From IMG/VR virus record IMGVR_UViG_3300005289_000052, positions 1 through 64,000 of that record: a stretch of DNA of 64,000 bases; one strand, 5' to 3'. The position numbers and the translations under genes were made by a program. This document shows positions 31,839 through 62,006 of the stretch, piece by piece. Position 1 is the stretch's first letter. Each line of letters begins with the position of its first letter. The notes below the pieces were generated by a model that worked only from the letters and a program-made list of their open reading frames with translations, made no database searches and had not been told where the DNA came from.

Positions 31839-32345
31839 ATGGGTAATGTGAGTGGCTCTTTATTTGGCTGTATCACAGAGTCTACCCTACAGGTAGACGA
31901 CATCCTTAGTAGTCCTTACCCCTATGAGCAACAGCTTGTAAAGATTCTCACAGGGGACATTGTCATTGACGCTATGAGTGTTTCAGATGTCTTGGAACAC
32001 TCAGACAAGGTCATCAAGATTGAAGGGATCGAGAAACTCAATCGATCCCTGTACCAAGCTTGCAAAGACCTAGCAGAGGTTATGGAACATGATGGGCCTA
32101 TTACTTGCCATCTGTTCCTGTCTCCTGCTGGGGGTAAGAGCTTTCCTTGGCACGATGATCCCGACGACGTGTACCTGTACATGGTCGAGGGTGCTAAAAC
32201 TATGGCTGTGGGCAACGAAGTCCATAAGCTGACCAAGTGGGACCATCTCTTCATTCCACGAGGCACGCAACATAGAGCTGTGAACTATCACGCCTCGAAG
32301 ATGCTAAGCTTTGGGTTGGAGCGATTCATTGCTGAGAAGCTCTGA
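31839..32345 (+). CDS. JmjC/cupin Fe(II)-2OG oxygenase (YcfD/ROX-like minimal domain)
   Basis: FPWHDDPDDVYL..EG.K and LFIPRGTQHRA give the HxD...H triad plus a 2OG-binding Lys. Confidence 0.85.
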   Translation: MGNVSGSLFGCITESTLQVDDILSSPYPYEQQLVKILTGDIVIDAMSVSDVLEHSDKVIKIEGIEKLNRSLYQACKDLAEVMEHDGPITCHLFLSPAGGKSFPWHDDPDDVYLYMVEGAKTMAVGNEVHKLTKWDHLFIPRGTQHRAVNYHASKMLSFGLERFIAEKL

Positions 32346-33379
32346 TGACCAAAACTATTTACGTCAAAACCACCGGTACCTGTAACCTTGCGTGCAAGCA
32401 TTGCTTCACCAACGGCAAGAACGGTGATCGTACCCAATTTGATCCAGTGCAGTTCGGTGACTGGATTGAAGAGTACATGTCCAAACACCCTAAAGGGACC
32501 GAGTACCACCTCGAGTTCCATGGTGGTGAACCCTTCCTTGTTCCACTCCCTAAGCTGATCCAGCTCGCGGATCGTTTTTATGACCGTGACGGGGTGTCGA
32601 TGTGCGCCAACAGCAACTTGACGTTTAAGTTGACTGAGGAACTCATCGCCTTTATTAAGCATTACTTCTACGGACACATTGGCACCAGTTGGGACCACTG
32701 GATTCGTTGGGGTAATCAAAAACAGTTTGACCTTTGGCGGTCGAACTTGAAAACCTTGCGTGAGCGTGATGTCTGCATCTATCTCAAGGTGTCGGTGAGT
32801 CGTGAGTTGATCAAGACCACACCGGACTGGTTCTTGGACCAGATCGAAAGCTTTGGGGTAACTGAGGTTTCGTTGGAGCGTCTAACGATGGACGGCAGTG
32901 CCAACGAGAACTTGGACATCTTCCCTAACAACGAGGAACAGGACAACTGGTACCTCGAGCTGTACAAGCGATACAAGCAACGCAAACTCAACTTCAAGAT
33001 CCGAACCCTCGACATCCTTGAGCAGAAGCTTAAGTACAACGTGGTGAAGGTGGACACCAACTGTCGCAACTGTGAACAGAATCTGGTGACCATCAACTCT
33101 AACGGGACTTTGGGTGGTTGTCCGAACGTGGCCTCTGCAAGACAGCATGCTCGTTTGGAAGAAGGGGCTGATGCGTTTCTCTCCTCGGATGCTCGGGTAG
33201 AAGAGATCGCTAAGGAATTGACTTGGGGTGATGGTTGCTTGAACTGTGACGTGTTCGACTTATGCGGTGGGGATTGCCATCGCTTGCCTTGGCAGAAGGG
33301 TCGCTGTGGTGGCCTTAAGAACACGCTGAGGTATTTGTCGGGCCGTTCCACACAATCCAATTTGATCCTGAAGGTGTGA
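32345..33379 (+). CDS. Radical SAM/SPASM protein 1
   Basis: CNLACKHC, FHGGEP; C-terminal CRNC, GGCPN, CLNCDVFDLCGGDC, C. Confidence 0.93.
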   Translation: MTKTIYVKTTGTCNLACKHCFTNGKNGDRTQFDPVQFGDWIEEYMSKHPKGTEYHLEFHGGEPFLVPLPKLIQLADRFYDRDGVSMCANSNLTFKLTEELIAFIKHYFYGHIGTSWDHWIRWGNQKQFDLWRSNLKTLRERDVCIYLKVSVSRELIKTTPDWFLDQIESFGVTEVSLERLTMDGSANENLDIFPNNEEQDNWYLELYKRYKQRKLNFKIRTLDILEQKLKYNVVKVDTNCRNCEQNLVTINSNGTLGGCPNVASARQHARLEEGADAFLSSDARVEEIAKELTWGDGCLNCDVFDLCGGDCHRLPWQKGRCGGLKNTLRYLSGRSTQSNLILKV

Positions 33380-33380
33380 A

Positions 33381-33935
33381 ATGACGGACATTACAAGACA
33401 GATGGTCGCTGACCAAGCGAACGCTGTGATTCGAGGGAACGCCAACGCCGGTATCTCGTGGGGGACGAACAGCTTCCCTGCTGGTGCCCTGGCTGGTTGG
33501 TTTGGTGGGTCGACTGCGGGTAACCCCGTAGCCCTCAGTGCTGGTAGCATTGCTGCTGGCAACCTTTCGGCATCGAACGTGTCAGCGGTACTGCGTAACT
33601 TCACCAACCAGTTTGCTGCGATTCGTCGTACGCGGATTGTGGTTTATTACGCTAAGAACTGGGGTGAGGATTACATCTACTCCGGTGTTGATGTGCGCGT
33701 GGACTCTACGGCTATTGCCTATACGGCGTATCCTGCTGGCAGTCCCGGTAACAACGCAGCACTCCCTGGCTTGGCGGCAGGGGCCACTGCCTCGTGGGGT
33801 AATATGGCGGCGTGTATCAACAACCTGTGGGCACAGTACAACGAGATGTGTCGTAACACCACGTTGACACTGACCAACACCATCTGTCACTCGAGCTGCC
33901 ACGACAACTGTCACTGCAACCGTGGGCGTCGTTAA
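33381..33935 (+). CDS. Putative substrate: small Ala/Gly/Asn-rich structural-like protein with a Cys/His-rich C-terminal tail
   Basis: Ends ICHSSCHDNCHCNRGRR; sits directly after rSAM 1. Confidence 0.65.
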   Translation: MTDITRQMVADQANAVIRGNANAGISWGTNSFPAGALAGWFGGSTAGNPVALSAGSIAAGNLSASNVSAVLRNFTNQFAAIRRTRIVVYYAKNWGEDYIYSGVDVRVDSTAIAYTAYPAGSPGNNAALPGLAAGATASWGNMAACINNLWAQYNEMCRNTTLTLTNTICHSSCHDNCHCNRGRR

Positions 33936-33945
33936 GGAGTCCTCA

Positions 33946-34692
33946 ATGTCTGAAGAAAAACCTCTGGTCCAAGTTGAGGTCACTGCTCCGATTCCTCTGG
34001 ACGTGCTCAAGCGCAAGTTCAAAGAGAACATCGAGTTCGTTATCGACTACGATGCGAGCAAGCTTAAGGGTAAGGTGTTGATCACCTACCTGAGCAACCT
34101 CAAGATCAAGTGTCGCCTGAAACTGACTGACCAGTCTGTTGCACTGGCGTTGGTGGAAGAGTACCTGAACATTCCGGTACTGGTCGATATGTCAGACCTT
34201 GAAGACTTGGCGATGGACATTCTGTTGGCCTACACAGGCAAGCCGAACCGCATCGCTGTGGACCTGTCTGACTTCTTCGTTCGTAACAAGGAAGCACTGG
34301 ACCGTTGGGTACGTCGTCTGTACTCCATTCCTCTGTACGCTTTGTGGTCGATGGAGCAGTACAAGTCCGAGGTAGAGAAATTCCCAGTGGACGAGGAAGA
34401 TACCATTGCTGGTGTCAACTTCGTGATGCTGATCGCTCACCCTGACTTTGCCGTCTTCATGGAAAACGTTCAAGAGGACCAATACACTTGGTGCCCAACG
34501 TTCTTCAAGGAGTACGTGTTCCAGGGTAGCAACCTCTTCAACTTCTTTGCTGACGAGCGCAACCCGTTCTTCGTGGGACTTCTGGCCATCCAGAGTCCTG
34601 AAATGTTTAACGAGATCGCACCGAAAGTCCAAAAGGCTTACGACGATTCCGTGGCCCTCATGAAAGGTATCGAGCATGTACCATCTCTTTAA
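33946..34692 (+). CDS. Hypothetical protein in the rSAM operon
   Basis: AGGAG RBS, start MSEEK, overlaps the next gene. Confidence 0.8.
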   Translation: MSEEKPLVQVEVTAPIPLDVLKRKFKENIEFVIDYDASKLKGKVLITYLSNLKIKCRLKLTDQSVALALVEEYLNIPVLVDMSDLEDLAMDILLAYTGKPNRIAVDLSDFFVRNKEALDRWVRRLYSIPLYALWSMEQYKSEVEKFPVDEEDTIAGVNFVMLIAHPDFAVFMENVQEDQYTWCPTFFKEYVFQGSNLFNFFADERNPFFVGLLAIQSPEMFNEIAPKVQKAYDDSVALMKGIEHVPSL

Positions 34693-35731
34693 CTCGGTGT
34701 ATGTAGACCTCGAGCGCCGCATCAACCGCACGGTCGACAACATCACCATCTCGCCGTACATTGGTCTGGAGTATTTCCCAGGCCAGAACGAAACTGCTGG
34801 TCGTCAGATCGGTTACGCCAAGACCATGGAATCGGTTGAACCCGAAGTCCTGATCGGCTGGTTCAAAGAAGCCATGCTGTCCAAAGAGAAGACCTTCATC
34901 TTCTGCGACGGCACCACCTACATGCGGTTGTACTCCATGTTGGTGAAAGCGGTACTGCCCAAGGTGGACCTCGAAACCTTCAAGTGGATCTGGCTCTGCA
35001 AGAAGGCAACCTTCAACACTTCGTTGACCAACTGGAAACAGCCTGGCAACAACGTGCTGGATGGTTTGGAGATCACCACCGAAACCGTCGAGATGATGTT
35101 CAACCTCGACGACCCTCATCAAGAGGCCTTCACTGCACTGCTCGCCGGTAACGACGATGTAGTCTCACTGGAGTGGCATATCCTGCGTCTGGCGGCTATC
35201 GGTTACGTGGGCATCGTTCCTAAGCGTCTGAAACACATCCTGCGTCGTATCGCTCTGGCGAACACTCATGATGCACTCGATGTTTGGGGTCGTGTGATCA
35301 CTGATCCTGAACACTGGGAATACGCTGGCGCTGACCGTGACACCCTGCTCGATGCTCCTAGTGTGTTCCAAGGTGCACTGAACCTTCACTTTACCAACAA
35401 CCCGATCTTCTTGAAGCCTGGGCTGTTCGTGAAGCATCCTCAAGATGCGTGGCTCTGCAACCTGCTGGAAGAACTGCACCCGTTGCTCGAGCGTGTAGGT
35501 GAGGGTCCAACTGCCAAGCGTACGTTGAAGATCCTGAGCTTCCTGCGAGACCTCAACCCGCTGTCCGATCCAGGTAAGTGTCTGGAACGCTGCCGTGACT
35601 TCTTTGTTGGTATTGATCGGCTGGCCATGCCAAACCGTGACTCCAGCAAGTACGACGAAAACCTGATCCGTTATATCCTCAGTCGTGACCAGGCAGATCT
35701 GGCACGCATGTTTGAAGGGGCAACTTGGTGA
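34676..35731 (+). CDS. Hypothetical protein in the rSAM operon
   Basis: 351 aa, overlaps both neighbours. Confidence 0.8.
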   Translation: MYHLFNSVYVDLERRINRTVDNITISPYIGLEYFPGQNETAGRQIGYAKTMESVEPEVLIGWFKEAMLSKEKTFIFCDGTTYMRLYSMLVKAVLPKVDLETFKWIWLCKKATFNTSLTNWKQPGNNVLDGLEITTETVEMMFNLDDPHQEAFTALLAGNDDVVSLEWHILRLAAIGYVGIVPKRLKHILRRIALANTHDALDVWGRVITDPEHWEYAGADRDTLLDAPSVFQGALNLHFTNNPIFLKPGLFVKHPQDAWLCNLLEELHPLLERVGEGPTAKRTLKILSFLRDLNPLSDPGKCLERCRDFFVGIDRLAMPNRDSSKYDENLIRYILSRDQADLARMFEGATW

Positions 35732-36735
35732 ATTTAATCCCGGTGGTAGACGTACTAGCGGACAAGAAAGGCGCAACGAAAGAAGCACACCTGATCTTGT
35801 TCGAGAAGTGTAACCTGCGTTGTTCGTTCTGCCACCAGGACCACGATTCAACCGTAGGTTTGGATGCGGATGAGATCATGCGTAAAGGGATCAGGCTCGT
35901 TGAGTCCTCAGACCTTGAAGCACCGATCGTTATCAACATCACTGGCGGCGAGTTGTTTACCGACGACATCGAAGACTGGATGTTTGGGTACTACCTGTCC
36001 TTGGGTGAGTACCTGCTGCAAAACTTCAAACGCGCTAAGATTGTCTACGGGACGAACTTGGTGTACGAGAAGGTATGGCGTGTCGAGCGACTGATGACCA
36101 TGTTGAGCGCTCATAGCTCTCCTAGTCAAGGGGTTAGCTTGTCGACGTCATACGACCCCGCAGGCCGGTTCAATCCAGCACAGCGGGAATTGTTCTTCAA
36201 GAACTTGGAACGGGTTGGCCTTTGGGTTGACACGGTAAACGTGGTAATCACTAAACAGAACATCGACGTCTTCCTGAACGACCGTGAGGGCGTTGAGGTG
36301 AAAGATCTGGCGTACGACTACGATCTGTATTTTGATCATTACATACCAAGCGAAAGATATGAAGAGCACCAACCTACTGAGTCACAGATCCGTCAACTCT
36401 ATTTGAAGCTGGCGAAGAAGTATCCTCTCTCGTATCCCATTGCCTCCTGGAAAAACCAGCAGTTCAATGAGACGACTTGTCGTTCCACCAAGATCATCAA
36501 CAAAGATGGTGTGGTGACTACGTGCTGGTCGGAAGCGGGGAAGGATGCGATCCTTGACGAAGGTGAAGGGTTGGTTGCTAAACAATCGGCGGAAGAACGG
36601 TTTATCGAACATTACGGGTGTTTGTCGTGTGAGTATTACCAACGCTGCGGTTTGCGTTGTTTCCTCCACCACAGCTTTATCGAAGGCTCTTCCACAGAGT
36701 GTGAGATCAAGCTCCTGTTCGACGAAATCTTGTAG
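35725..36735 (+). CDS. Radical SAM protein 2 (twitch/SPASM-like C-terminus)
   Basis: CNLRCSFC, ITGGELF, TTCRS, TTCW, CLSCEYYQRCGLRC, EC. Confidence 0.92.
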   Translation: MVNLIPVVDVLADKKGATKEAHLILFEKCNLRCSFCHQDHDSTVGLDADEIMRKGIRLVESSDLEAPIVINITGGELFTDDIEDWMFGYYLSLGEYLLQNFKRAKIVYGTNLVYEKVWRVERLMTMLSAHSSPSQGVSLSTSYDPAGRFNPAQRELFFKNLERVGLWVDTVNVVITKQNIDVFLNDREGVEVKDLAYDYDLYFDHYIPSERYEEHQPTESQIRQLYLKLAKKYPLSYPIASWKNQQFNETTCRSTKIINKDGVVTTCWSEAGKDAILDEGEGLVAKQSAEERFIEHYGCLSCEYYQRCGLRCFLHHSFIEGSSTECEIKLLFDEIL

Positions 36736-36788: not shown

Positions 36789-37877
36789 ATGGATCTCATT
36801 ATAAAGCCAACCGTGAAATGTAACTTCAAGTGCACGTTCTGTTCGAGCACGCACTTGTCAGAAGAACCGAAAGACATTGTCGAGTTGGCTGATATCGAAG
36901 CCTTCTTGAAGCGTTACCCCGACACCCGGACCATCATCGTTAACGGTGGTGATCCATTGATGATGCCACCCAAGTACTACTGGGACATGATCGAGATCCT
37001 AGACCGTTTGGACATGGACACTGTCATCTCCTTTACCACGAACCTGTGGGCGTTCTACAAGAAACCTGAACTGTGGGCTCCGTTGTTTAAGCTGGATCGG
37101 ATTGGTGTCAACACCTCGTTCCAGTACGGCGACAAACGTCTCAAGGGAGACGGTACTCCTCTGACTGAGGATGAGTTCATTGCGATCTCTGATCTGTTCT
37201 TGGAGAAGGTTGGGTATCGTCCAGACTTCATTGCGGTGATTGACCAAGACAACGTTGACACGGTCATCCCGACGGTAGAGTTGGCTAAGCGCCTAGGTCT
37301 GGAGGCGAAGATCAACTACGTCTCTGCATCTGGTCCTGAGGTTGTGAATCGCGGTGTGGTAATGGGGAGCATCAACAACTTCTACACTCAAGCTGACATG
37401 TACGAACAATACATCAAGATCTACGACGCAGGTCTGATGGAGTGGGAGTACAACACCAAGCAGATGTCTCGTCGCTTGAAGTTTGGTAACACGACTTGTC
37501 CTTTGGCCCGGTCCTGCGATGAAGGCATCCGTGCGTTACAACCTGGGCAGACGTACTTCTCTTGTGGTAGTTTCGGGGATGATGGCGAATACCCGATTGA
37601 CTTCCAGAAAGAGATGGCGGGTGAGTTCTTCACGCCTTTGCAAGTCGTTCCTGAATTGGATTCGATGAAAGATGCGTGCTACACCTGCCCGATGTTCAGC
37701 ATCTGTAATGGATGTCGTAAGACTGTGGCTGACACTAAACGCTTTGGACTCACGGAGTACCACTGCAAGAAGATGAAGTCACTTGCTCCACGCATCATCG
37801 AGATCAACGGCATGACGGGGTTGTTGGAACCCACCCCTTACGTTGATGAATCCGTCCAGATCATTGCAAGGGGCTAA
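36789..37877 (+). CDS. Radical SAM/SPASM protein 3 (anSME-like)
   Basis: IKPTVKCNFKCTFC, NGGDPLMM, CPLARSC, FSCG, CYTCPMFSICNGC, HC. Confidence 0.94.
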   Translation: MDLIIKPTVKCNFKCTFCSSTHLSEEPKDIVELADIEAFLKRYPDTRTIIVNGGDPLMMPPKYYWDMIEILDRLDMDTVISFTTNLWAFYKKPELWAPLFKLDRIGVNTSFQYGDKRLKGDGTPLTEDEFIAISDLFLEKVGYRPDFIAVIDQDNVDTVIPTVELAKRLGLEAKINYVSASGPEVVNRGVVMGSINNFYTQADMYEQYIKIYDAGLMEWEYNTKQMSRRLKFGNTTCPLARSCDEGIRALQPGQTYFSCGSFGDDGEYPIDFQKEMAGEFFTPLQVVPELDSMKDACYTCPMFSICNGCRKTVADTKRFGLTEYHCKKMKSLAPRIIEINGMTGLLEPTPYVDESVQIIARG

Positions 37878-38070: not shown

Positions 38071-38447
38071 CTCACGAAGTAAAAGACAATGTTCACCTGA
38101 TCCATGGATTGATTGACACTCAGACCGGTGCCGACCCAATCTGCGTCTACATCGACAAGGAAAGCTTGGTCGACATGTTGGAGGACATCGTTCACAACGT
38201 GGTGACAGTGCGTTACTGGATCAGCAGTAATCCGCTGAAGACTGTGGAGGAAGCAGACATGCAAACCCTCGAACAGGTCAACGGTTATCTGGATGCTGAG
38301 ATCCAACATCGTTACTCAGACATCACCGGTTACTTGTGGACCGATGAACACTTCAAGGTGGGTGGTCATGACCTGATCCCAATCTTTGAAGAGGCCGAAG
38401 AGAAGTACCTCCTACTGGAAATCACGGTCCATGAAAAGTCCGATTAA
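38067..38447 (+). CDS. Acidic hypothetical protein in the rSAM operon
   Basis: 126 aa from MTHEV; coupled on both sides. Confidence 0.75.
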   Translation: MTHEVKDNVHLIHGLIDTQTGADPICVYIDKESLVDMLEDIVHNVVTVRYWISSNPLKTVEEADMQTLEQVNGYLDAEIQHRYSDITGYLWTDEHFKVGGHDLIPIFEEAEEKYLLLEITVHEKSD

Positions 38448-39366
38448 CCTCAGTCTCAACCTGACCTACTACTGTAACTTCAAGTGTGAGTTCTGTTACC
38501 TCACGCCTGAACAGTTGCGAGATCGTCAACGTCTGCCTCTGGACATTCTGGAGCAGCAGCTAGACAAGGTCCTGGAGCAATACGACGTACATCACGTAGA
38601 CATCTACGGTGGTGAGGTCATGGTGTTGCCGAAGGACTATCTGTTCCAAGTGCGTGACATCCTTCATGCTCGAGGCATCGACGACCTGGTGTTGATCACT
38701 AACGGGTCTGTCCTCAACGAAGTAACCTCGTGTATGGACTTCGACCTGAGCATCTCCTACGACCTCACAGCGCGTGAGAGAAGCGATTGGGTACTGGGCA
38801 ACATCTTTATGCTCGATCGTCCCTTCTCGATGCTTACGCTGGCTTCTAGGAAGTTCCTGGACACGGTTACGCCTGACGACTACGTTCAAGAGCTGAACAT
38901 GCTCAATGGGATGAAGTGTGCAGAGATCAAACCGTACTCTTCAAACCAAGCCAACCAACAAAGCGTGAGTTACAAAGAGTTCGAGGACTTCGTTTGGGCT
39001 GTGATCAATCACCCTGATCGACAGTTCTACTTCGAGAACCGCACGCAAGTCAAAGAGGCGGCAGAAGGTAAGCGTAACGCTTATAGTGACGATCACCTGT
39101 ACATCACACCGAAGGGTGAGTTTGCAGTGCTCGAGTTCGATCACAACGACCATGAGTTCTTCTTAAGGATGGACTCCCTCCATGACTACCGTAACTGGTG
39201 TCAGGTCGAACGATTCCGTGTGGAGGGCAACCTGTTCTGCGGTGCGTGCCCTTACAAAGGAGGCTGCCTGTCGGAACACTTACGCGACGTGAAGTCCTTG
39301 GACAACTCCTGTAATGGATTCCGAGGACTCCTAGACAGGTGGGTAGAACATGCAGGTTCAACATAG
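38431..39366 (+). CDS. Radical SAM protein 4
   Basis: CNFKCEFC, IYGGEV, CGACPYKGGC, SC; start MKSPI. Confidence 0.92.
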   Translation: MKSPINLSLNLTYYCNFKCEFCYLTPEQLRDRQRLPLDILEQQLDKVLEQYDVHHVDIYGGEVMVLPKDYLFQVRDILHARGIDDLVLITNGSVLNEVTSCMDFDLSISYDLTARERSDWVLGNIFMLDRPFSMLTLASRKFLDTVTPDDYVQELNMLNGMKCAEIKPYSSNQANQQSVSYKEFEDFVWAVINHPDRQFYFENRTQVKEAAEGKRNAYSDDHLYITPKGEFAVLEFDHNDHEFFLRMDSLHDYRNWCQVERFRVEGNLFCGACPYKGGCLSEHLRDVKSLDNSCNGFRGLLDRWVEHAGST

Positions 39367-40354
39367 GCAGCGTTTGGAAATCACCCTCGATATCTTTCGG
39401 GGGTGTGGTCATCACTGTGTCGGGTGTATGATCGACAAACAGTTGGGTGGTGAGGTCAGCGACATTCCTGAACTACTCCAACTGATTGAGGAAATGACAG
39501 CCGTGGGTTACGTCGCCTTTGACTTAGGTGTCGGACCTACTGACTACATGTCCTCTGACAACGTTCAAGACGTGATGGGCAATGAGACCTTCCAAGCGAT
39601 GGCTCAACTGTTCCATCAGGTTACGTTCAACGCAGCGTTCTTGGAAAAGGATCTGGAGAAGTACGAAGCGATGTGCCAAGACATTGATCTGGCGTGTCCT
39701 GGTAAACCGATCCGCTTCCTGATCCCTGCTGCACCGACCTTCTTTAAGAACGAGAAGTTCGGCAACATGATCGTGCAGAAGCTCGAACACATCAAGGCCA
39801 CGTTCCAATCAGCGTTCCTCAATGAGGCAGGCTTTGTGGTGACGTGTAACCATGAAACGATGGACGAGAACTTTGACGCTAACATGCGCAATGGATTTGA
39901 TGTTGAGTTCCCTGTGGACAAAGACGACATCTTAAACATTCCGTATGGTCGTACCAAGAACCTTGACCTGATGGTGGGTCAACGGGTCAAGCGGGTCTCG
40001 CACCAGATCAGTGAGTTCTATGCAGGACTGGAAGGGGAAGACGAGCGTCGCAAGAACCCAGATTTGCACTACGACACAGGCACGATGGTTAACCTGTTGT
40101 ACACTGGTGGAAAGCTGTACTGGGTTCCCTTCCTTAAAGACGACTGTCCGTTCATACACGACGAGTTTGTCGTTCCGAGGCCCTGGACTATGGATAACCT
40201 TCTGCGCGTGCGTAACAGCGCTATGGAGCGTTCTGTGGAGTATCTCCAAGGCACCGAGTGTCTGAACTGTGTGCACTTCGCCAGTTGCATGGAGAAAGGC
40301 ATCAGTACCATCATGCAGAAGCTTTCGATTCGCGATTGCCTAGTGGGGTTGTGA
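39350..40354 (+). CDS. Non-canonical radical SAM-like protein 5
   Basis: CGHHCVGC, GVGPTD in place of GGE, C-terminal CLNCVHFASC..C. Confidence 0.75.
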   Translation: MQVQHRQRLEITLDIFRGCGHHCVGCMIDKQLGGEVSDIPELLQLIEEMTAVGYVAFDLGVGPTDYMSSDNVQDVMGNETFQAMAQLFHQVTFNAAFLEKDLEKYEAMCQDIDLACPGKPIRFLIPAAPTFFKNEKFGNMIVQKLEHIKATFQSAFLNEAGFVVTCNHETMDENFDANMRNGFDVEFPVDKDDILNIPYGRTKNLDLMVGQRVKRVSHQISEFYAGLEGEDERRKNPDLHYDTGTMVNLLYTGGKLYWVPFLKDDCPFIHDEFVVPRPWTMDNLLRVRNSAMERSVEYLQGTECLNCVHFASCMEKGISTIMQKLSIRDCLVGL

Positions 40355-41406
40355 TGTTTGCGCTCAGGATTTCCAAATCGTTTAACCTCTCCTTAGAAAT
40401 CCTTAAGGGGTGCGGGTTCAGTTGCCCTGGGTGTACAGTTGAGAAGAACTTTGCTCCCATGGAAATCCCAGAAGCAGACGCTCAGGCTCTGTTGGCTCTC
40501 GTGGATGAATTGAAAGCTGATGACTTCCGACTGTTGGAATTGAAGTTAGGTCCCACTGACATCACCAGCTCTGACAACGGCTTTGCAGCAATGCAACACC
40601 CGTTCGTTAAAGAGATGGCGTTACGGTACAAAGCTTTGAACATCAGCCACCCCATGCTTCATGATCGTGGGTTTGTGGAACTGGCTCAGTTGATTGATGA
40701 ACTGATCCCAGGTAAAAAGCTCAGCGTCGGTGTTCCAATGACGTTGAAGAATATACAGAACCCGAAATATATGGCGCTGGTTAAACAGCACATCGCGTTG
40801 TTCAAAAGTCTGCTTAAGAAAGTCGACTTCAACCGTGTGTATGCAACCTTCAACGTGATCGAAGACAACTTGGAGAACCTGTCCGTAGAGAGTTACGAGC
40901 AGGCACACCAGATGGATTTAGGTGACGTTGGGATTGTGGTGGAGTTTCCTTTCGCCCACTCTCGCCAAGGGATGGATAACTTGCTGGTGTTGGACAGATT
41001 CCGTCGGGACCTGTACCACTTCACCGAGTTCATTAAAGAACGGGCTAACACTAAAAGCTTTCGACCACTGCAACCTGCTGTGTTGAGCGGGATTGAGTTC
41101 ACGTACCGGGCTGGGTCTTTGTACTCTACTCCGGTGCTGGTTGAGAACTTGCCGATCTTCCATCCTGATTTCGAGTTACCCAAACCTTGGAGCGCATCTG
41201 AACTGATGTCGTTCTTGGAGAATCGTTACTACGATAACCTCATCGAGTTTGCAGACCACCCTGAGTGTGGGAACTGCTGCTTCCTCGACAACTGTGCTCG
41301 TGGTGATGTTCACCGCATCATGAAGCTGGTAGGACGTGACACCTGTCTGACTGGCACTAAGAACCGCTGGGACTTGATCCTAGTAGAGGATGGCCTGAAT
41401 GATTAA
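40354..41406 (+). CDS. Non-canonical radical SAM-like protein 6 (paralog of 5)
   Basis: CGFSCPGC, KLGPTD, C-terminal CGNCCFLDNC..C; TGATG overlap; start MFALR. Confidence 0.75.
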   Translation: MFALRISKSFNLSLEILKGCGFSCPGCTVEKNFAPMEIPEADAQALLALVDELKADDFRLLELKLGPTDITSSDNGFAAMQHPFVKEMALRYKALNISHPMLHDRGFVELAQLIDELIPGKKLSVGVPMTLKNIQNPKYMALVKQHIALFKSLLKKVDFNRVYATFNVIEDNLENLSVESYEQAHQMDLGDVGIVVEFPFAHSRQGMDNLLVLDRFRRDLYHFTEFIKERANTKSFRPLQPAVLSGIEFTYRAGSLYSTPVLVENLPIFHPDFELPKPWSASELMSFLENRYYDNLIEFADHPECGNCCFLDNCARGDVHRIMKLVGRDTCLTGTKNRWDLILVEDGLND

Positions 41407-41854
41407 CCCAAACGATTGCTTTGCGATCATGGATCACATACCGGTTCCAGAAGAAATGGAACTGTGGTGCATGTGTCAACCTGACAAAACCACTGTGGAC
41501 GATGATCGCATTGTCGATTACGTTTGGGACGTTCTGCTCCCCGCTCTGCGTAGCCTGCCAAACCATCCGATGGACTTGGCTAACATCCGACCGTGTGCTT
41601 ACCACGTCAATCTGTCCACCAACGGAGTAACGCCCCACAATCACTTACCGCACGCTTTAACGACGGTGCTGTACGTGACAGACGCTGATGGCGCTCTCGT
41701 CGTAGAACCGTGTTCTGAGAAGCCTCACAAGGTGTATCCGCGCCGTGGTCGCATGGTAGTGATGCACGGTTCAACTATGCATGGTGTTGAGCCTTCCTTC
41801 GACGAACAATTCCGCATCTCACTGGTCGTTAGCTATGAATTCCCAACCACATAA
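41399..41854 (+). CDS. Fe(II)/2OG oxygenase (TIGR02466-like)
   Basis: PHNH....TTVLYV, GRMVVMHG...HGV, RISLV. Confidence 0.8.
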   Translation: MINPNDCFAIMDHIPVPEEMELWCMCQPDKTTVDDDRIVDYVWDVLLPALRSLPNHPMDLANIRPCAYHVNLSTNGVTPHNHLPHALTTVLYVTDADGALVVEPCSEKPHKVYPRRGRMVVMHGSTMHGVEPSFDEQFRISLVVSYEFPTT

Positions 41855-42272
41855 GCAGTACCAAGAGCTGTACCAGATGGTGGTCACCGACCACACCGAT
41901 GACTTCTCTCTGATGGAGTTCGTTGAAGACGACGAACTGTTGGAGAATGCCAAGAACTACTTCCGTAAGGCTGAGTTCCCTCTGGTGTATCCGGCGAAGT
42001 CGATGGCCGTGGCTGTGATCTACGCCTTGCTGCTTGAAGAAACCTACGCCATCAATCCGTTTGACTCGTTGCGAGACTTGGATCTGTTCTTAGGACAGGA
42101 CCAATACTTCCACGTTTATGACGAACATCCAGAAGAGTACGATGCCTTGCTCGAATGGGTACTCAGTCACGAGAACTGGAAGGAGATGGGTTGGGCTCCG
42201 AAGACTGTGGAATACTTCCGACTGGAGTGTACCGCAGAAGGCATTCAGGAAGTCATGGAGAAACTTGGATGA
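41835..42272 (+). CDS. Acidic hypothetical protein in the rSAM operon
   Basis: 145 aa from MNSQP; coupled on both sides. Confidence 0.75.
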   Translation: MNSQPHKQYQELYQMVVTDHTDDFSLMEFVEDDELLENAKNYFRKAEFPLVYPAKSMAVAVIYALLLEETYAINPFDSLRDLDLFLGQDQYFHVYDEHPEEYDALLEWVLSHENWKEMGWAPKTVEYFRLECTAEGIQEVMEKLG

Positions 42273-42829
42273 ACATCATTCAACCGTGGGAAACACCAAT
42301 CGGTCACTCGAACTTTGGTCAGTGTCTGGACCTCACTGCTTTGAAAGACGAGATCGGTGCACTGGCGTTGATGTCTGATCAAGAGGACGGTGGACAGCGT
42401 TACGTCAACGACTACGACACCTTCCCCAACATCGTACACCTGTTGCGTGACATCATCGACCACGAAGTCAAAGACTACATCAAGAAGATGTGGGACTACG
42501 GGTTGGGTGAGTTCCGCCGTGAGACCAATGCGAAGTGGATTCCACCGGGAGAGGGCTTGTACCCGCACTACCATCCTGGCTCCCAAGTGTCGGCGATCTT
42601 CTACCCTGAGGACTCTCCTTCTGGCTTGGCGATGTTTGACCCTCGTGGTAATGCGTGTCGTGGCTATCCCAAACAGATCCGTAACCGTTACATGGCTCCG
42701 CACCTGATCTCTCCGGCAGCAGGTGATCTGTGGATCTTCCCTTCGTTCGTACAACACAGCGTCTCCTACGTGAAAGAGGATACGCGGCTTTCTATGTTGT
42801 GTGAATACTACTTCTCTGACGAGCGCTAA
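42269..42829 (+). CDS. Fe(II)/2OG oxygenase (TIGR02466-like)
   Basis: PHYHP..VSAIFYP, FDPR, GDLWIFPSFVQHSV, RLS. Confidence 0.88.
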   Translation: MNIIQPWETPIGHSNFGQCLDLTALKDEIGALALMSDQEDGGQRYVNDYDTFPNIVHLLRDIIDHEVKDYIKKMWDYGLGEFRRETNAKWIPPGEGLYPHYHPGSQVSAIFYPEDSPSGLAMFDPRGNACRGYPKQIRNRYMAPHLISPAAGDLWIFPSFVQHSVSYVKEDTRLSMLCEYYFSDER

Positions 42830-42831
42830 CC

Positions 42832-43386
42832 ATGCAACTTATCCAACCGTGGAACACGTCGATCCTCAAGGTCAACTTGGCCGACATCGTAAACCTCGAG
42901 GAGATCTCTCAAGAAATCCTCAACCTGCACTGCATCGCTCCGCAGGAATCGAAGACTGCGTACAAGGTGACTCCAGAAGAGTTCCCTGCTCTGTGCGACT
43001 TCCGTGATCGGGTTGTTACGAACCTGGTGAAGGAATACCTCAAGAAGACCATGGACTACGACTTGACCGACTTCACTGTCGACACGTTCGGTAAGTGGTT
43101 TGAAGCAGGTACTGATCTGGGTGCTCACGTTCATGGTAGTACCGGAGTCACTTCCGTGTTCTATCCTGCCGACTACGAGTCGGGTATGACCATCTACGAT
43201 CCACGTGGTAACGCTTCTCGTGGCTACCCGCGTGAGATTCGTGACTCGTATTTCTCGCCGTACTACCACGCTCCAAAAGCCGGTGATCTGCTGATCTTCC
43301 CTGGCTACTTGCAGCACTACGTTCCGACTGTAAAGGACGCACTGCGTCTGTCGTTGATCAACGACTACATGTTCAAGAGCGTCTAA
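42832..43386 (+). CDS. Fe(II)/2OG oxygenase (TIGR02466-like), tandem paralog
   Basis: AHVH..VTSVFYP, YDPR, GDLLIFPGYLQHYV, RLS. Confidence 0.88.
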   Translation: MQLIQPWNTSILKVNLADIVNLEEISQEILNLHCIAPQESKTAYKVTPEEFPALCDFRDRVVTNLVKEYLKKTMDYDLTDFTVDTFGKWFEAGTDLGAHVHGSTGVTSVFYPADYESGMTIYDPRGNASRGYPREIRDSYFSPYYHAPKAGDLLIFPGYLQHYVPTVKDALRLSLINDYMFKSV

Positions 43387-43459: not shown

Positions 43460-44137
43460 ATGTATCAAGTAACCGATCGTAGTGAGATCAAAAAGACCCA
43501 ACAGAAGCTTAAAGACCGTGGCTTCTACACTGGCATCGTTGACGGGATCTGGGGTCCCCTGTCGCAAGCAGCACTGGAAGCCTCTCAAGGTGAGAAGGTG
43601 GTGAGTCCTGCCTTTGACACCACCCGGATTATCTGGGCAACCAAGGTGTCCAAAGAGTTCATCCTGAAAGTGCGTGACATTGCCAAGAAGCTCCAGATGC
43701 CTACCGAAGGCGCTAACTGGCTGATGGCGTGCATGGCTTTCGAAACCGGTGAGACCTTCTCCCCAACCATTAAGAACGGTGCTGGTGCTCCGTACTACGG
43801 TCTAATTCAGTTCGGTGCTGCTGCTGCCAAAGATGCTGGCACTACTCTTGACGCTCTGCTCAAGATGACTGCTGAGCAACAGCTCGACTACGTGTACGCC
43901 TTCTTCAAACCGTACACCGGTAAGCTCAAGACCCTGAGCGACATCTATATGCGCATTCTTTGGCCTGCTGCTGTCGGCAAGCCAGAAGACTACGTGATCT
44001 TCGATCAGCAGGTCCGTCCTACTGCGTATGTTCAGAACAAAGGTCTGGACATCAACAAGGATGGTAAAGTCACCAAGGCGGAGTGCGCAGCCAAGGTCCA
44101 AGAAAAATACGTGCGTGGACAAAAGTTCATCGCTTAA
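43460..44137 (+). CDS. Modular endolysin: N-terminal peptidoglycan-binding domain plus lysozyme-like/transglycosylase domain
   Basis: Q..L..RGFY.G.VDGIWGP.S..AL; MAFETG, GLIQF, QLDYV..F; EF-hand-like LDINKDGKVTKAE. Confidence 0.88.
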   Translation: MYQVTDRSEIKKTQQKLKDRGFYTGIVDGIWGPLSQAALEASQGEKVVSPAFDTTRIIWATKVSKEFILKVRDIAKKLQMPTEGANWLMACMAFETGETFSPTIKNGAGAPYYGLIQFGAAAAKDAGTTLDALLKMTAEQQLDYVYAFFKPYTGKLKTLSDIYMRILWPAAVGKPEDYVIFDQQVRPTAYVQNKGLDINKDGKVTKAECAAKVQEKYVRGQKFIA

Positions 44138-44146
44138 GGAAAAGTC

Positions 44147-45706
44147 ATGGGTGCATTAGCGAGTTACTTCCCTGCGATGGAGGAGGTCGAACAAGACTTC
44201 CTTAACGCCGGGTTACTGGTAGAAAGTCGTGTTGCTTCGGAACGTGCTGACGATGACGTAACTGAACTGGGCGAGATCCATGCTACCTTAGAAGCTTTGG
44301 CTGTTTCGATGGAAGCAACTCTGGAGGCCGATCCTTGGACTCCTGTCTTCATCAATCACGCACTAGATTCCTTCGGTCGCCGCACTGGCTTGAAGCTCCC
44401 TGTGGCGTCGTTGGAAGATGCTACTGTCACCATTTCGATGGAGAGCATTGGTGGCGCTATCAAGGCCATCTGGGATGCCATCGTCAAGGCAGTGAAAGCA
44501 GCTCTTAAAGCGGTGGCTGACTTCTTCCGTCGGATCTATGAACTGGTTGCTGGTAAGCGCAAGAAGATCGAAGCAGGTTTTGCTAAGGCCAAGAAAGAAG
44601 GTGACTCCACGCCTTCCAAGCTGGCTGACACCAACAACCTGTCGAAGGTCGCTGACGCAGAGATCGAAGCTTTCAAGAAGAAGCTCAAGACCCCTGAGTT
44701 GGTTAAGTGTCGCAAAGACCAATTGGTTGCACTGACTCCAGCGGCAGCCACAGTGATCGACCGGGCTAACATCTTGGATGGCAACCAAACCATCCCTAGA
44801 GAAGAGATCACCCACGGTGGTGAGGTCATCACCCTGGTGCGCCGTGAAGACGTCAAGCGCGCCAAATACGTCAAGCTCTGCCAAGCAGGTAATGACTTCA
44901 TCGCTCACGCCAGTGTTGCCGGTATCTCGTTGGCTGGTCTGAAAGAGCATCGCTGTGAGATCAGTATCGCTGACGTTACCGAAGTGGTCTGGGAGTGTCT
45001 GTACCGAGGTAAAGAGATCCGCGAAGTAGGTAACAACACTTCGACAGCGGTTCAGGAAATCTCGAGACTGGCTATTGCAAAGCTGAAAGGATACTTCGCT
45101 AAGGATCGCAAGAACAATCCTGGCGACTTCCATTTCAGTAGCCAAAGCGACGCTATGAATGCTGAGGTGTTGGCCAAATTCGAAGCGATTCGCAACGAGT
45201 TCAAAAGGATCACCGGTAAGGATGGTTGGATTCCTGCTGGTCGACGTGTGGTTAAGTTCCTGGAACCCAAGAACGTTTATCACTTGTTCCCTGAGTCCAA
45301 TGCGATGCCCGAGCTTGCCAAGTTCACCGAGAACGAAGTCTTGCTGAACATCCCAACTTGGTCTGAAGCCAAGAAGGCCTCTGATGGTGTAACCTCGCTG
45401 TTGATCCTCAACACGCAGAAGGACATCATCACCGTCATCAACATCGGCTTTGACCGAGCGTTGGATGAATGGAACGCAGCCATCAAGTGGGTTGGTGAAC
45501 AAGGGTATGGCGACAAGACCCCAGTAGTCACCAAGTACTTCACGGACTACTGCAAGCTGTTCTTCACTGATATCCAAACTCAGTACAACCGTTTCCTGCG
45601 CTCACAACTGGCAATGGAAGGTACGGCGATTCAATGGGCTAACGTTCTGTCTGGCACCATGGCTCGTTTGGCTGATGCCAAATCTCTCGTTGAGGAAATT
45701 GCTTAA
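44147..45706 (+). CDS. Inner-head/ejection protein (phiKZ gp93/gp162 paralog-family-like)
   Basis: Acidic propeptide with SMEA, SLED, SMES, then amphipathic IKAIWDAIVKAVKAALKAVADFF. Confidence 0.72.
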   Translation: MGALASYFPAMEEVEQDFLNAGLLVESRVASERADDDVTELGEIHATLEALAVSMEATLEADPWTPVFINHALDSFGRRTGLKLPVASLEDATVTISMESIGGAIKAIWDAIVKAVKAALKAVADFFRRIYELVAGKRKKIEAGFAKAKKEGDSTPSKLADTNNLSKVADAEIEAFKKKLKTPELVKCRKDQLVALTPAAATVIDRANILDGNQTIPREEITHGGEVITLVRREDVKRAKYVKLCQAGNDFIAHASVAGISLAGLKEHRCEISIADVTEVVWECLYRGKEIREVGNNTSTAVQEISRLAIAKLKGYFAKDRKNNPGDFHFSSQSDAMNAEVLAKFEAIRNEFKRITGKDGWIPAGRRVVKFLEPKNVYHLFPESNAMPELAKFTENEVLLNIPTWSEAKKASDGVTSLLILNTQKDIITVINIGFDRALDEWNAAIKWVGEQGYGDKTPVVTKYFTDYCKLFFTDIQTQYNRFLRSQLAMEGTAIQWANVLSGTMARLADAKSLVEEIA

Positions 45707-61948: not shown

Positions 61949-62006
61949 TACCAACCGAAGACCATCAAGTCTCGTGGTTGTGACAAGCTCGGCCAACGTT
62001 TTTCGC

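What the first reader, a model, noticed from the sequence alone, without database searches (positions are those of the whole stretch)
39350..41406. Tandem pair of non-canonical radical-SAM-like paralogs
Both keep CxxxCxxC but have Gly instead of the aromatic residue before the third Cys (CVGC, CPGC). Both replace GGE with GPTD and keep a C-terminal CxxCx(5)C cluster. The other four rSAMs are canonical. The pair could be an obligate heterodimer, non-catalytic Fe-S scaffolds or a new rSAM subfamily.
Basis: partly seen in the sequence, partly recalled or inferred. Interest (0 to 1): 0.6.

Follow-up and report, generated by a model that had tools for sequence, protein, structure and literature searches.

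The report
Phage radical-SAM-like paralog pair, unnamed subfamily
Two neighbouring genes of a jumbo phage encode diverged copies of an unnamed, mostly phage-borne branch of the radical SAM iron-sulfur enzymes, and they sit in a conserved multi-enzyme cluster that probably modifies the Cys/His-rich tail of a co-encoded phage protein.

Summary
Genes A (39350-40354) and B (probable start 40354, end 41406) are full-length paralogs (24% identity, E 7e-33). Both carry CxxxCxGC, GPTD and a C-terminal CX2CX5C plus one more Cys.

These motifs define a small, discrete family. It gives 198 clusters among 1.84 billion protein representatives. In it the seven Cys and the Asp of GPTD are invariant, and the residue before the third Cys is Gly in 118 of 129 members.

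The window is the start of a 244-kb phiKZ-like jumbo phage. The pair lies in a conserved operon with four canonical rSAMs, a JmjC cupin, three 2OG oxygenases and a 184-aa protein ending in an invariant CHxSCHxxCHxxRGRR tail, the likely substrate.

Copy number of the family per cluster runs from 1 to 7, which argues against an obligate A/B heterodimer. Gly before the third Cys has a precedent in the proven rSAM HpnH.

Verdict: a real, uncharacterised variant of a known superfamily. It is probably catalytic, but its chemistry is unknown.

The parts
39350..40354 (+). Gene A, 334 aa: CxGC-type radical-SAM-like protein. CGHHCVGC at nt 39404-39427, GPTD at 39533-39544, CX2CX5C at 40259-40288, fourth auxiliary Cys at 40337-40339.
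40354..41406 (+). Gene B, 350 aa from ATG 40354, which overlaps A's stop by one base. Paralog of A. CGFSCPGC at nt 40411-40434, GPTD at 40549-40560, CX2CX5C at 41266-41295, fourth auxiliary Cys at 41344-41346.
38386..39366 (+). rSAM4 (CNFKCEFC, GGE, CX2CX5CX14C). Nearest canonical relative of the A/B family. Overlaps the start of A by 17 nt.
   Evidence: PF04055 35.3 bits. Family HMM E 1.2e-5. hhalign of the family against rSAM4 orthologs: probability 90.9%, E 1.2e-6, 276 columns. Cys layout.
36789..37877 (+). rSAM3 (CNFKCTFC, GGD), with a SPASM-type C-terminal Cys set.
   Evidence: PF04055 44.2 bits. phrog_1802 E 1.4e-52. Cys positions.
35725..36735 (+). rSAM2 (CNLRCSFC, GGE), with the seven-Cys SPASM pattern.
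34676..35731 (+). 351-aa conserved cluster protein with no family assignment.
   Evidence: A gene of similar size sits at the syntenic position in DT01.
33922..34692 (+). 256-aa conserved cluster protein (phrog_20767, function unknown). Also present in the bacterial version of the cluster.
   Evidence: E 8.9e-39. The bacterial 250-aa protein shows a similar sequence stretch, judged by eye without an alignment score.
33381..33935 (+). 184-aa protein with an invariant C-terminal tail (CHxSCHxxCHxxRGRR type). Proposed substrate of the cluster.
   Evidence: Alignment with DT01 and RSL2 orthologs. Tail found in every one of the 23 IMG/VR loci with the full 10-kb upstream flank and in other loci. 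Atlas model pLDDT 0.35.
32345..33379 (+). rSAM1 (CNLACKHC, GGE, full SPASM). Always lies directly upstream of the tail protein.
   Evidence: Weak, below-cut-off resemblance to anSME and PapB models, E 1e-12. phrog_1802 E 2.3e-53. Synteny.
31839..32345 (+). JmjC/cupin protein at the head of the cluster.
   Evidence: PF07883 and PF08007 above cut-off. Same position in DT01, FLC6 and L008.
41399..41854 (+). 151-aa 2OG-Fe(II) oxygenase-like protein. Its start overlaps the end of B by 8 nt.
   Evidence: PF13640 27.3 bits. Sequence.
42155..42829 (+). 2OG-Fe(II) oxygenase (PF13759). Likely start near 42269.
   Evidence: E 4e-10.
42832..43386 (+). 2OG-Fe(II) oxygenase (PF13759).
   Evidence: E 1.4e-8.

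Best explanation
**What they are.** A and B are two diverged tandem paralogs of an unnamed, predominantly phage-borne branch of the radical SAM / SPASM-Twitch superfamily.

**Predicted build (from models and conservation).**
- A (beta/alpha)6 partial barrel.
- One [4Fe-4S] cluster held by CxxxCxGC after strand beta-1.
- One auxiliary cluster held by a CX2CX5CX16C set in a SPASM-like C-terminal domain. By motif this is the Aux II ligand set. The Aux I ligands are absent.

**Proposed function (inferred).**
- Each works as a separate radical maturase.
- They act together with four canonical rSAM/SPASM enzymes, a JmjC cupin and three 2OG-Fe(II) oxygenases of the same operon.
- The target is the invariant Cys/His-rich C-terminal tail of the co-encoded 184-aa protein (33381-33935).
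- The two copies arose by duplication and now probably handle different sites or steps.

**Status of each step.** Shown: motifs, paralogy, family limits, predicted fold and synteny. Inferred: Fe-S binding, SAM cleavage, the identity of the substrate, and the division of labour.
For: **Fold.**
- pLDDT is 93.4 for A and 92.1 for B.
- Foldseek's top hit is EpeE, E 9e-6.

**Conservation.**
- Seven Cys and D65 are invariant. G25, G62, T64, N71 and R201 are at least 90% conserved over 106 members at 19% mean column identity.
- These residues lie on loops that follow the predicted barrel strands.
- The auxiliary spacing CX2CX5CX16C holds in 258 of 275 proteins. The X3C ligand of Aux I is present in 2 of 275. 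The motif definition is from PMC6231123.

**Relation to a canonical enzyme.** The family profile aligns with the rSAM4 type of the same cluster at 90.9% probability, E 1.2e-6, over 276 columns. That type has the same 3+4 Cys layout.

**Gly before the third Cys is compatible with catalysis.** HpnH (TIGR03470, 528 bits) has CNLACAGC.

**Context.**
- The operon is tightly packed, with overlapping stops and starts.
- The same cluster is found in DT01, in RSL2, in metagenomic jumbo-phage contigs and in one bacterial genome. In each the tail protein follows the first rSAM.

**Copy number** runs from 1 to 7 per cluster.
Against: - No biochemical data exist for any member.
- PF04055 is not reached, and profile searches of PDB sequences find nothing significant.
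- Two canonical SAM contacts are changed: the aromatic residue before the third Cys, and GGE. I could not inspect model coordinates, so SAM binding is unverified.
- The GPTD-to-GGE equivalence has an alternative register in the hhalign alignment.
- The link between A/B and the tail protein rests on synteny alone.
- The number of family copies does not track the number of CH repeats in the tail.
Confidence: 0.55

Rival explanations
1. A and B form an obligate heterodimer. One copy is catalytic and the other is a partner, and neither works alone.
For: - The A-then-B order is strict in 26 of 26 IMG/VR loci.
- A's stop and B's start share one base, which suggests translational coupling.
- The two evolve at unequal rates: A is 66% and B 38% identical to the DT01 orthologs.
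Against: - RSL2-type phages have a single copy.
- Other clusters have 3, 4 or 7 copies.
- Both copies keep every invariant residue.
- From background knowledge, not tested here: solved SPASM/Twitch maturases mostly act as monomers.
- The complex prediction gave no verdict and counts neither way.
Confidence: 0.12
2. A and B are Fe-S proteins that no longer cleave SAM. They would be derived from rSAMs and serve as an electron relay, a substrate chaperone or a scaffold for the four canonical enzymes.
For: - Two classical SAM contacts are replaced family-wide: the aromatic residue before the third Cys, and GGE.
- No rSAM sequence model reaches its cut-off.
- Every cluster also contains canonical rSAMs that could do the chemistry.
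Against: - The CX3CX2C triad, which leaves one Fe open for SAM, is invariant.
- Polar residues on the predicted active-site loops (D65, N71, R201) are also at least 90% conserved over deep divergence.
- An acidic residue is retained at the GGE position.
- HpnH shows that Gly before the third Cys is compatible with SAM chemistry.
Confidence: 0.2
3. The cluster, including A and B, builds or modifies a small molecule, nucleotide or DNA base rather than the 184-aa protein. In this reading the tail protein is a metal-binding accessory.
For: - Jumbo phages often modify nucleotides (background knowledge).
- The Cys/His tail could simply bind metal.
Against: - The top structural matches are peptide or protein maturases.
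- The first rSAM is always directly followed by the tail protein. In the bacterial cluster that protein shrinks to a precursor-like 104 aa.
- A locus with a second rSAM-plus-CQxx-repeat protein pair repeats the enzyme-substrate layout.
- The JmjC_2 family includes protein hydroxylases (plus background knowledge).
Confidence: 0.1

Closest known systems
anSME (anaerobic sulfatase maturase, PDB 4K36-4K39), a SPASM-domain radical SAM enzyme
   Same: - rSAM barrel followed by a beta-hairpin and helix domain with a CX2CX5C...C cluster site.
- No N-terminal RRE domain.
- Acts on a protein substrate.
   Different: - 7-15% identity.
- The NCBIfam anSME model does not match A or B.
- anSME has aromatic-Cys and GGE, and two auxiliary clusters from seven Cys.
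- A and B have Gly-Cys and GPTD, and only the four Cys that correspond by motif to Aux II (PMC6231123).
EpeE/YydG peptide epimerase (PDB 8AI1-8AI6), with a 'T-SPASM' domain
   Same: - Foldseek top hit, E 9e-6.
- One rSAM cluster plus a single auxiliary cluster in an extended Twitch-like domain (PMC13012085).
- Similar length.
   Different: - TIGR04078 does not match A or B.
- EpeE has canonical SAM motifs.
- Whether the auxiliary cluster occupies the same site was not testable here.
rSAM4 type of the same cluster (window 38386-39366 and its orthologs)
   Same: - The only family detectable by sequence: hhalign probability 90.9%, E 1.2e-6, 276 columns.
- Same 3+4 Cys layout.
- Same cluster, adjacent gene.
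   Different: rSAM4 keeps CNF(R/K)CxFC and GGE and passes PF04055. The auxiliary spacing is X14 rather than X16.
HpnH, adenosyl-hopene transferase (TIGR03470)
   Same: It has Gly before the third Cys (CNLACAGC in the G001 copy). This shows the substitution occurs in a working rSAM.
   Different: - It keeps GGE and has a different C-terminal Cys pattern.
- A and B do not match the HpnH model.
- No evidence of common descent beyond the superfamily.
CXXX-repeat peptide maturase systems (TIGR04115) and ranthipeptide/PapB systems
   Same: - Cluster logic: a SPASM rSAM next to a protein with C-terminal Cys-X3 repeats.
- rSAM1 resembles PapB (E 4.5e-12) and rSAM2 resembles TIGR04115 (E 0.004), both far below cut-off.
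   Different: - The substrate is 184 aa with a CHxx repeat and an RGRR end.
- Six rSAM-like enzymes plus oxygenases.
- Encoded by a phage.
- No curated model is met.

Membership tests
Radical SAM superfamily (PF04055) | CX3CX2C triad on the loop after beta-1, binding a site-differentiated [4Fe-4S] cluster. | tested here: met
   C19, C23 and C26 are invariant in 106 diverse members. In the models they lie between strand 8-13 and helix 36-51. Cluster binding itself was not measured.
Radical SAM superfamily (PF04055) | [quoted passage not shown] | tested here: met
   [not shown]
Radical SAM superfamily (PF04055) | Aromatic or hydrophobic residue before the third Cys (CX3CX-phi-C) contacting adenine. 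| tested here: not met
   G 118, D 9, N 1, A 1 among 129 representatives. HpnH also has Gly here.
Radical SAM superfamily (PF04055) | GGE motif at the end of beta-2, binding the SAM amino group. | tested here: not met
   GP(T/V)D occupies the position: spacing of 36-39 residues against 35-40, directly after beta-2. The Asp is invariant. hhalign gives an alternative register.
Radical SAM superfamily (PF04055) | Pfam gathering score of 29.5 bits. | tested here: not met
   A scores 13.6 bits (E 0.079). B has no hit.
Radical SAM superfamily (PF04055) | Reductive cleavage of SAM to a 5'-deoxyadenosyl radical. | not testable with these tools
   Needs an anaerobic enzyme assay.
SPASM domain (TIGR04085 / PF13186) | Seven-Cys motif CX9-15GX4C-gap-CX2CX5CX3C-gap-C, binding two auxiliary clusters. 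| tested here: not met
   Only CX2CX5C plus one Cys 17 residues later (258 of 275). X3C is present in 2 of 275. No conserved upstream Cys pair. No TIGR04085 hit. Motif definition from PMC6231123.
Twitch domain | Truncated SPASM domain binding one auxiliary cluster at the Aux I site, resembling the first half of SPASM. | tested here: inconclusive
   A single four-Cys site fits 'one auxiliary cluster'. By motif, however, the ligands are the second-half (Aux II) set.
anSME (TIGR03942), PapB, YydG/EpeE (TIGR04078) and HpnH (TIGR03470) equivalogs | Score above the curated NCBIfam cut-off. | tested here: not met
   No NCBIfam family at E <= 1 for A. For B only PFLA, at 14.8 bits against a cut-off of 231.
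phrog_31457 (phage protein family of unknown function) | Profile match. | tested here: inconclusive
   E 1.1e-7 for A and 9e-8 for B. The matches are weak, and for A partial. The single RSL2-type homolog scores 3e-34 against the B profile.

The most novel reading that the evidence does not exclude
Jumbo phages of the phiKZ-like group carry a complete, self-contained protein-maturation pathway: six or more radical-SAM-type enzymes plus Fe/2OG oxygenases. The pathway would turn the invariant CHxSCHxxCHxxRGRR tail of a phage protein into a heavily cross-linked, possibly metal-binding, structure. Within it the CxGC/GPTD family would use a SAM-binding geometry or radical chemistry not yet described. 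One example would be 5'-deoxyadenosyl addition, as in HpnH, the other known rSAM with Gly at this position. The family would also carry only an Aux II-type cluster, the reverse of a Twitch domain.
Probability: 0.2. Interest if true: 0.8.

Novelty: new variant of a known kind. Interest (0 to 1): 0.55.

Why it matters
- **For radical SAM enzymology.** The family keeps the Fe-S triad and the fold but changes two of the classical SAM-binding motifs in a strictly conserved way. By motif it retains only the second auxiliary cluster site. That makes it a natural test of which contacts are needed for SAM cleavage.
- **For phage biology.** The pair marks a large, widely conserved and uncharacterised operon in phiKZ-like jumbo phages of Pseudomonas, Ralstonia and Burkholderia. 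The operon looks like a RiPP-type maturation pathway for a phage protein. Phage-encoded pathways of this size are hardly documented: the papers found only list the genes.
- **For annotation.** 28 of 99 public gene calls for A orthologs start just after the third Cys and so hide the motif.

Tried and rejected
- **Complex prediction of A with B.** Score 0.25, under the mark of 0.32, so no verdict. It is not evidence either way.
- **Profile searches of PDB sequences with A1 and A5.** Only insignificant N-terminal matches (MiaB, GDGT-MAS), so no residue-level mapping onto a solved SAM pocket was possible.
- **hhalign of A1 against the four canonical window rSAMs.** Probability 47.6%, N-terminus only. 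It was superseded by the comparison with rSAM4 orthologs.
- **The search for related loci in genome contigs with A5.** The distribution in cellular genomes therefore rests on one bacterial genome and 60 of its relatives that lack the family.
- **Literature searches.** Searches for a characterised phage rSAM/RiPP system, for 'CXXX repeat' and for the cupin/rSAM/2OG cluster found only genome-annotation mentions.
- **Copy number against CH repeats.** I looked for a correlation between the number of family copies and the number of CH repeats in the tail. None was seen.
- **Model coordinates.** They are not exposed by the tools, so the SAM pocket and the position of the auxiliary cluster could not be inspected.
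- **ESM Atlas look-up of the 184-aa protein.** No usable relatives.
Full report
**1. Observation**

The window is the first 64 kb of a single 243,669-bp virus record. GC content is 52% and the two ends share about 126 bp.

Gene A runs 39350-40354 (334 aa). Gene B most likely starts at ATG 40354, which shares one base with A's TGA stop, and ends at 41406 (350 aa).
- CxxxCxGC near the N-terminus (CGHHCVGC in A, CGFSCPGC in B);
- GPTD about 36-39 residues after the third Cys;
- a C-terminal CX2CX5C followed by one more Cys.

A and B align over their full length at 24% identity, E 7e-33, so they are true tandem paralogs. The four other rSAM genes of the cluster have canonical motifs (CNLACKHC, CNLRCSFC, CNFKCTFC and CNFKCEFC, each with GGE or GGD).

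**2. The motifs define a family**

Word-indexed searches found 99 homologs of A and 48 of B. None had a precomputed Pfam domain, and they lie on contigs of up to 289 kb.

A profile of both paralogs, run against 1.84 billion representatives, returned only 198 proteins at E <= 0.001. The family is therefore closed and does not merge into the very large rSAM superfamily.

Conservation within the family:
- Among 129 full-length representatives the residue before the third Cys is G 118, D 9, N 1, A 1. GPTD or a one-residue variant is present in most.
- In an alignment of 106 diverse members (mean column identity 19%) the invariant residues are C19, C23, C26, D65, C304, C307, C313 and C330 (A numbering). 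G25, G62, T64, N71 and R201 are at least 90% conserved.
- The fourth C-terminal Cys lies exactly 17 residues after the third in 258 of 275 proteins. The X3C position, which supplies a ligand of Aux I in SPASM enzymes, is Cys in only 2 of 275.
- One B sub-lineage has GPVD instead of GPTD but keeps the Asp and all the Cys.

**3. Family assignment by sequence fails; by fold it succeeds**

Sequence models do not place the proteins:
- Pfam gives A 13.6 bits on PF04055, against a cut-off of 29.5. B gets nothing.
- NCBIfam gives nothing meaningful.
- PHROGs gives only the function-unknown phrog_31457, weakly.
- PDB sequence searches give nothing significant.

AlphaFold2 models built on a 70-sequence alignment are confident: pLDDT 93.4 and pTM 0.91 for A, pLDDT 92.1 and pTM 0.90 for B. 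Both show six alternating strands and helices, then a beta-hairpin and helices that carry the C-terminal Cys.

Structural matches:
- Foldseek's best PDB hits are EpeE, anSME, SkfB, SuiB, viperin, DesII and MoaA.
- Next come SuiB, ChlB, SkfB, TigE and CteB, all over the whole length.

**4. Which known motifs are changed**

GPTD sits directly after predicted strand beta-2 in both models. Its distance from the third Cys is 36 and 39 residues in A and B, and the family median is 38. The four canonical enzymes have GGE/GGD at 35-40 residues.

The only sequence-detectable canonical relative is the rSAM4 type of the same cluster (hhalign probability 90.9%, E 1.2e-6, 276 columns). That alignment puts GPTD opposite 'GHVD' and shifts GGE a few residues downstream. 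It needs a five-residue gap and has only moderate confidence there. I therefore regard the equivalence as likely, not proven.

By the published seven-Cys definition and the anSME ligand list (PMC6231123), the four conserved C-terminal Cys correspond to the Aux II set, and the Aux I set is missing. That is the opposite of a Twitch domain, which keeps the first half of SPASM. EpeE, with one auxiliary cluster in an 'extended twitch/T-SPASM' domain (PMC13012085), may be the nearest precedent. I could not check the cluster position without coordinates. rSAM4 orthologs share this 3+4 Cys layout.

**5. Gly before the third Cys has a precedent**

I surveyed the PF04055 hits of one bacterial genome as a control. 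They showed F, Y, H or M at this position. There were two exceptions: a member of the A/B family that turned up in a neighbouring frame of one locus, and one protein with CNLACAGC.

That protein is HpnH, adenosyl-hopene transferase (TIGR03470, 528 bits against a cut-off of 225). Gly at this site is therefore rare but compatible with SAM chemistry. From background knowledge, not tested here, HpnH adds the 5'-deoxyadenosyl radical to its substrate. A and B do not match the HpnH model.

**6. Context**

The nearest isolate is Pseudomonas phage pPa_SNUABM_DT01 (265 kb). A is 66% and B 38% identical to its orthologs, and the whole cluster is syntenic. Ralstonia RSL2/RSF1 and Burkholderia FLC6/S13, which are phiKZ-like, have a related cluster with a single family member. 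Published papers only list these genes.

In the window the operon reads, in order:
- JmjC/cupin (31839);
- rSAM1 with a full SPASM domain (32345);
- a 184-aa protein (33381);
- two conserved unknowns (33922 and 34676);
- rSAM2 (35725);
- rSAM3 (36789);
- rSAM4 (38386);
- A and B;
- three 2OG-Fe(II) oxygenase-like proteins, with one protein of unknown function between them (41399-43386).

Stops and starts overlap where I checked: at rSAM4/A, at A/B and at the end of B.

The 184-aa protein ends in an invariant CH-repeat tail of the form (V/I)CHxSCHxxCHxxRGRR. The tail is the same in the window, in DT01 and in RSL2. It is also present in every one of the 23 IMG/VR loci with the full 10-kb upstream flank. 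The Atlas model of this protein is of very low confidence (pLDDT 0.35).

The cluster also exists in one bacterial genome:
- It holds seven family members between 23 and 52 kb of one contig. I judged the contig bacterial from flanking genes such as AhpC and OsmC.
- Canonical rSAMs are interleaved with the family members.
- After the first rSAM comes a 104-aa protein ending ICHSNCY...SRSRR.
- Sixty relatives of that genome lack the family.

ESM Atlas clusters nearest to A are 99-100% viral. Another phage contig has a second rSAM followed by a protein with CQxx repeats. This is the layout of enzyme-plus-precursor RiPP systems.

**7. Copy number and the heterodimer idea**

The family occurs as:
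- one copy in RSL2;
- two in the window, DT01, L008 and L010;
- three in L027, L036 and L039;
- four in L006;
- seven in the bacterial genome.

Within the A/B clade the A-then-B order is strict in 26 of 26 loci. Variable copy number fits duplication followed by specialisation better than an obligate A/B complex. The complex prediction returned no verdict and is not used as evidence.

**8. Interpretation**

Most likely (about 0.55), A and B are functional radical-SAM-type maturases. Each would carry one SAM cluster and one auxiliary cluster. They would act with the other enzymes of the operon on the Cys/His tail of the 184-aa protein.

- Shown: motifs, paralogy, family limits, predicted fold and synteny.
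- Inferred: Fe-S binding, SAM cleavage, substrate and division of labour.
- Rivals: a non-cleaving Fe-S accessory (0.2), an obligate heterodimer (0.12), and a small-molecule or nucleotide pathway (0.1).

**9. Novelty and score**

The superfamily is known, and DT01's annotators already labelled both genes 'radical SAM protein'. The subfamily, however, has no curated Pfam or NCBIfam model and no characterised member that I could find. It has its own strictly conserved motif set. By motif it also has an unusual auxiliary-cluster arrangement, and it lies in a striking phage operon. I rate it a new variant of a known kind, interest 0.55.

No reads tools were used.

Noticed in passing
window 33381-33935 (also L001 6086-6622, L002 7134-7694): A 184-aa protein with an invariant C-terminal tail, (V/I)CHxSCHxxCHxxRGRR. 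It always lies directly after the first SPASM rSAM (motif CNLxCxHC). The Atlas model has very low confidence. It is the probable substrate of the whole cluster.
   Followed up: partly
G001:C4 about 23-56 kb (L003, L012, L013): A 3.4-Mb genome whose flanking genes look bacterial. It carries a homologous cluster with seven CxGC-family copies, several canonical rSAMs and a 104-aa precursor-like protein ending ICHSNCY...SRSRR. Sixty related genomes lack the family, which suggests horizontal acquisition.
   Followed up: partly
L010 17089-19039: A second enzyme-substrate pair in a phage contig: a 461-aa SPASM rSAM followed by a 187-aa protein with a C-terminal CQxx repeat run.
   Followed up: no
Public gene calls of A orthologs (28 proteins, from P0087 and P0094 to P0147): 28 of 99 A-family proteins lack the CxxxCxGC motif. 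Most of them are called from the Met just after the third Cys. In the IMG/VR DNA the motif is in frame upstream in 26 of 26 loci, so these are start-codon miscalls.
   Followed up: yes
L018-L028 and L039, B orthologs: One B sub-lineage has GPVD instead of GPTD. It keeps the Asp and all seven Cys.
   Followed up: partly
L042 1396-2409 (G001): HpnH (adenosyl-hopene transferase) has CNLACAGC. A proven rSAM family thus has Gly before the third Cys, but it keeps GGE.
   Followed up: yes
window 38386-39366: rSAM4 is canonical at the SAM motifs but has only four conserved C-terminal Cys (CX2CX5CX14C), like A and B. It is the only canonical rSAM that the family profile detects, so it may resemble the ancestor of the CxGC family.
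   Followed up: partly
window 44147-45706: A 519-aa protein with a phiKZ-like internal head protein domain (PF12699) lies downstream of a protein with a peptidoglycan-binding domain (43460-44137). This is consistent with a phiKZ-like jumbo phage.
   Followed up: no
window 61974-63998: GC content rises to 58% at the end of the window. Long open frames lie on both strands (+ 61974-63998, - 62007-63998).
   Followed up: no
G000:C1 ends: The first and last roughly 126 bases of the 243,669-bp record are the same sequence. This could be a circular assembly overlap or a terminal repeat.
   Followed up: no
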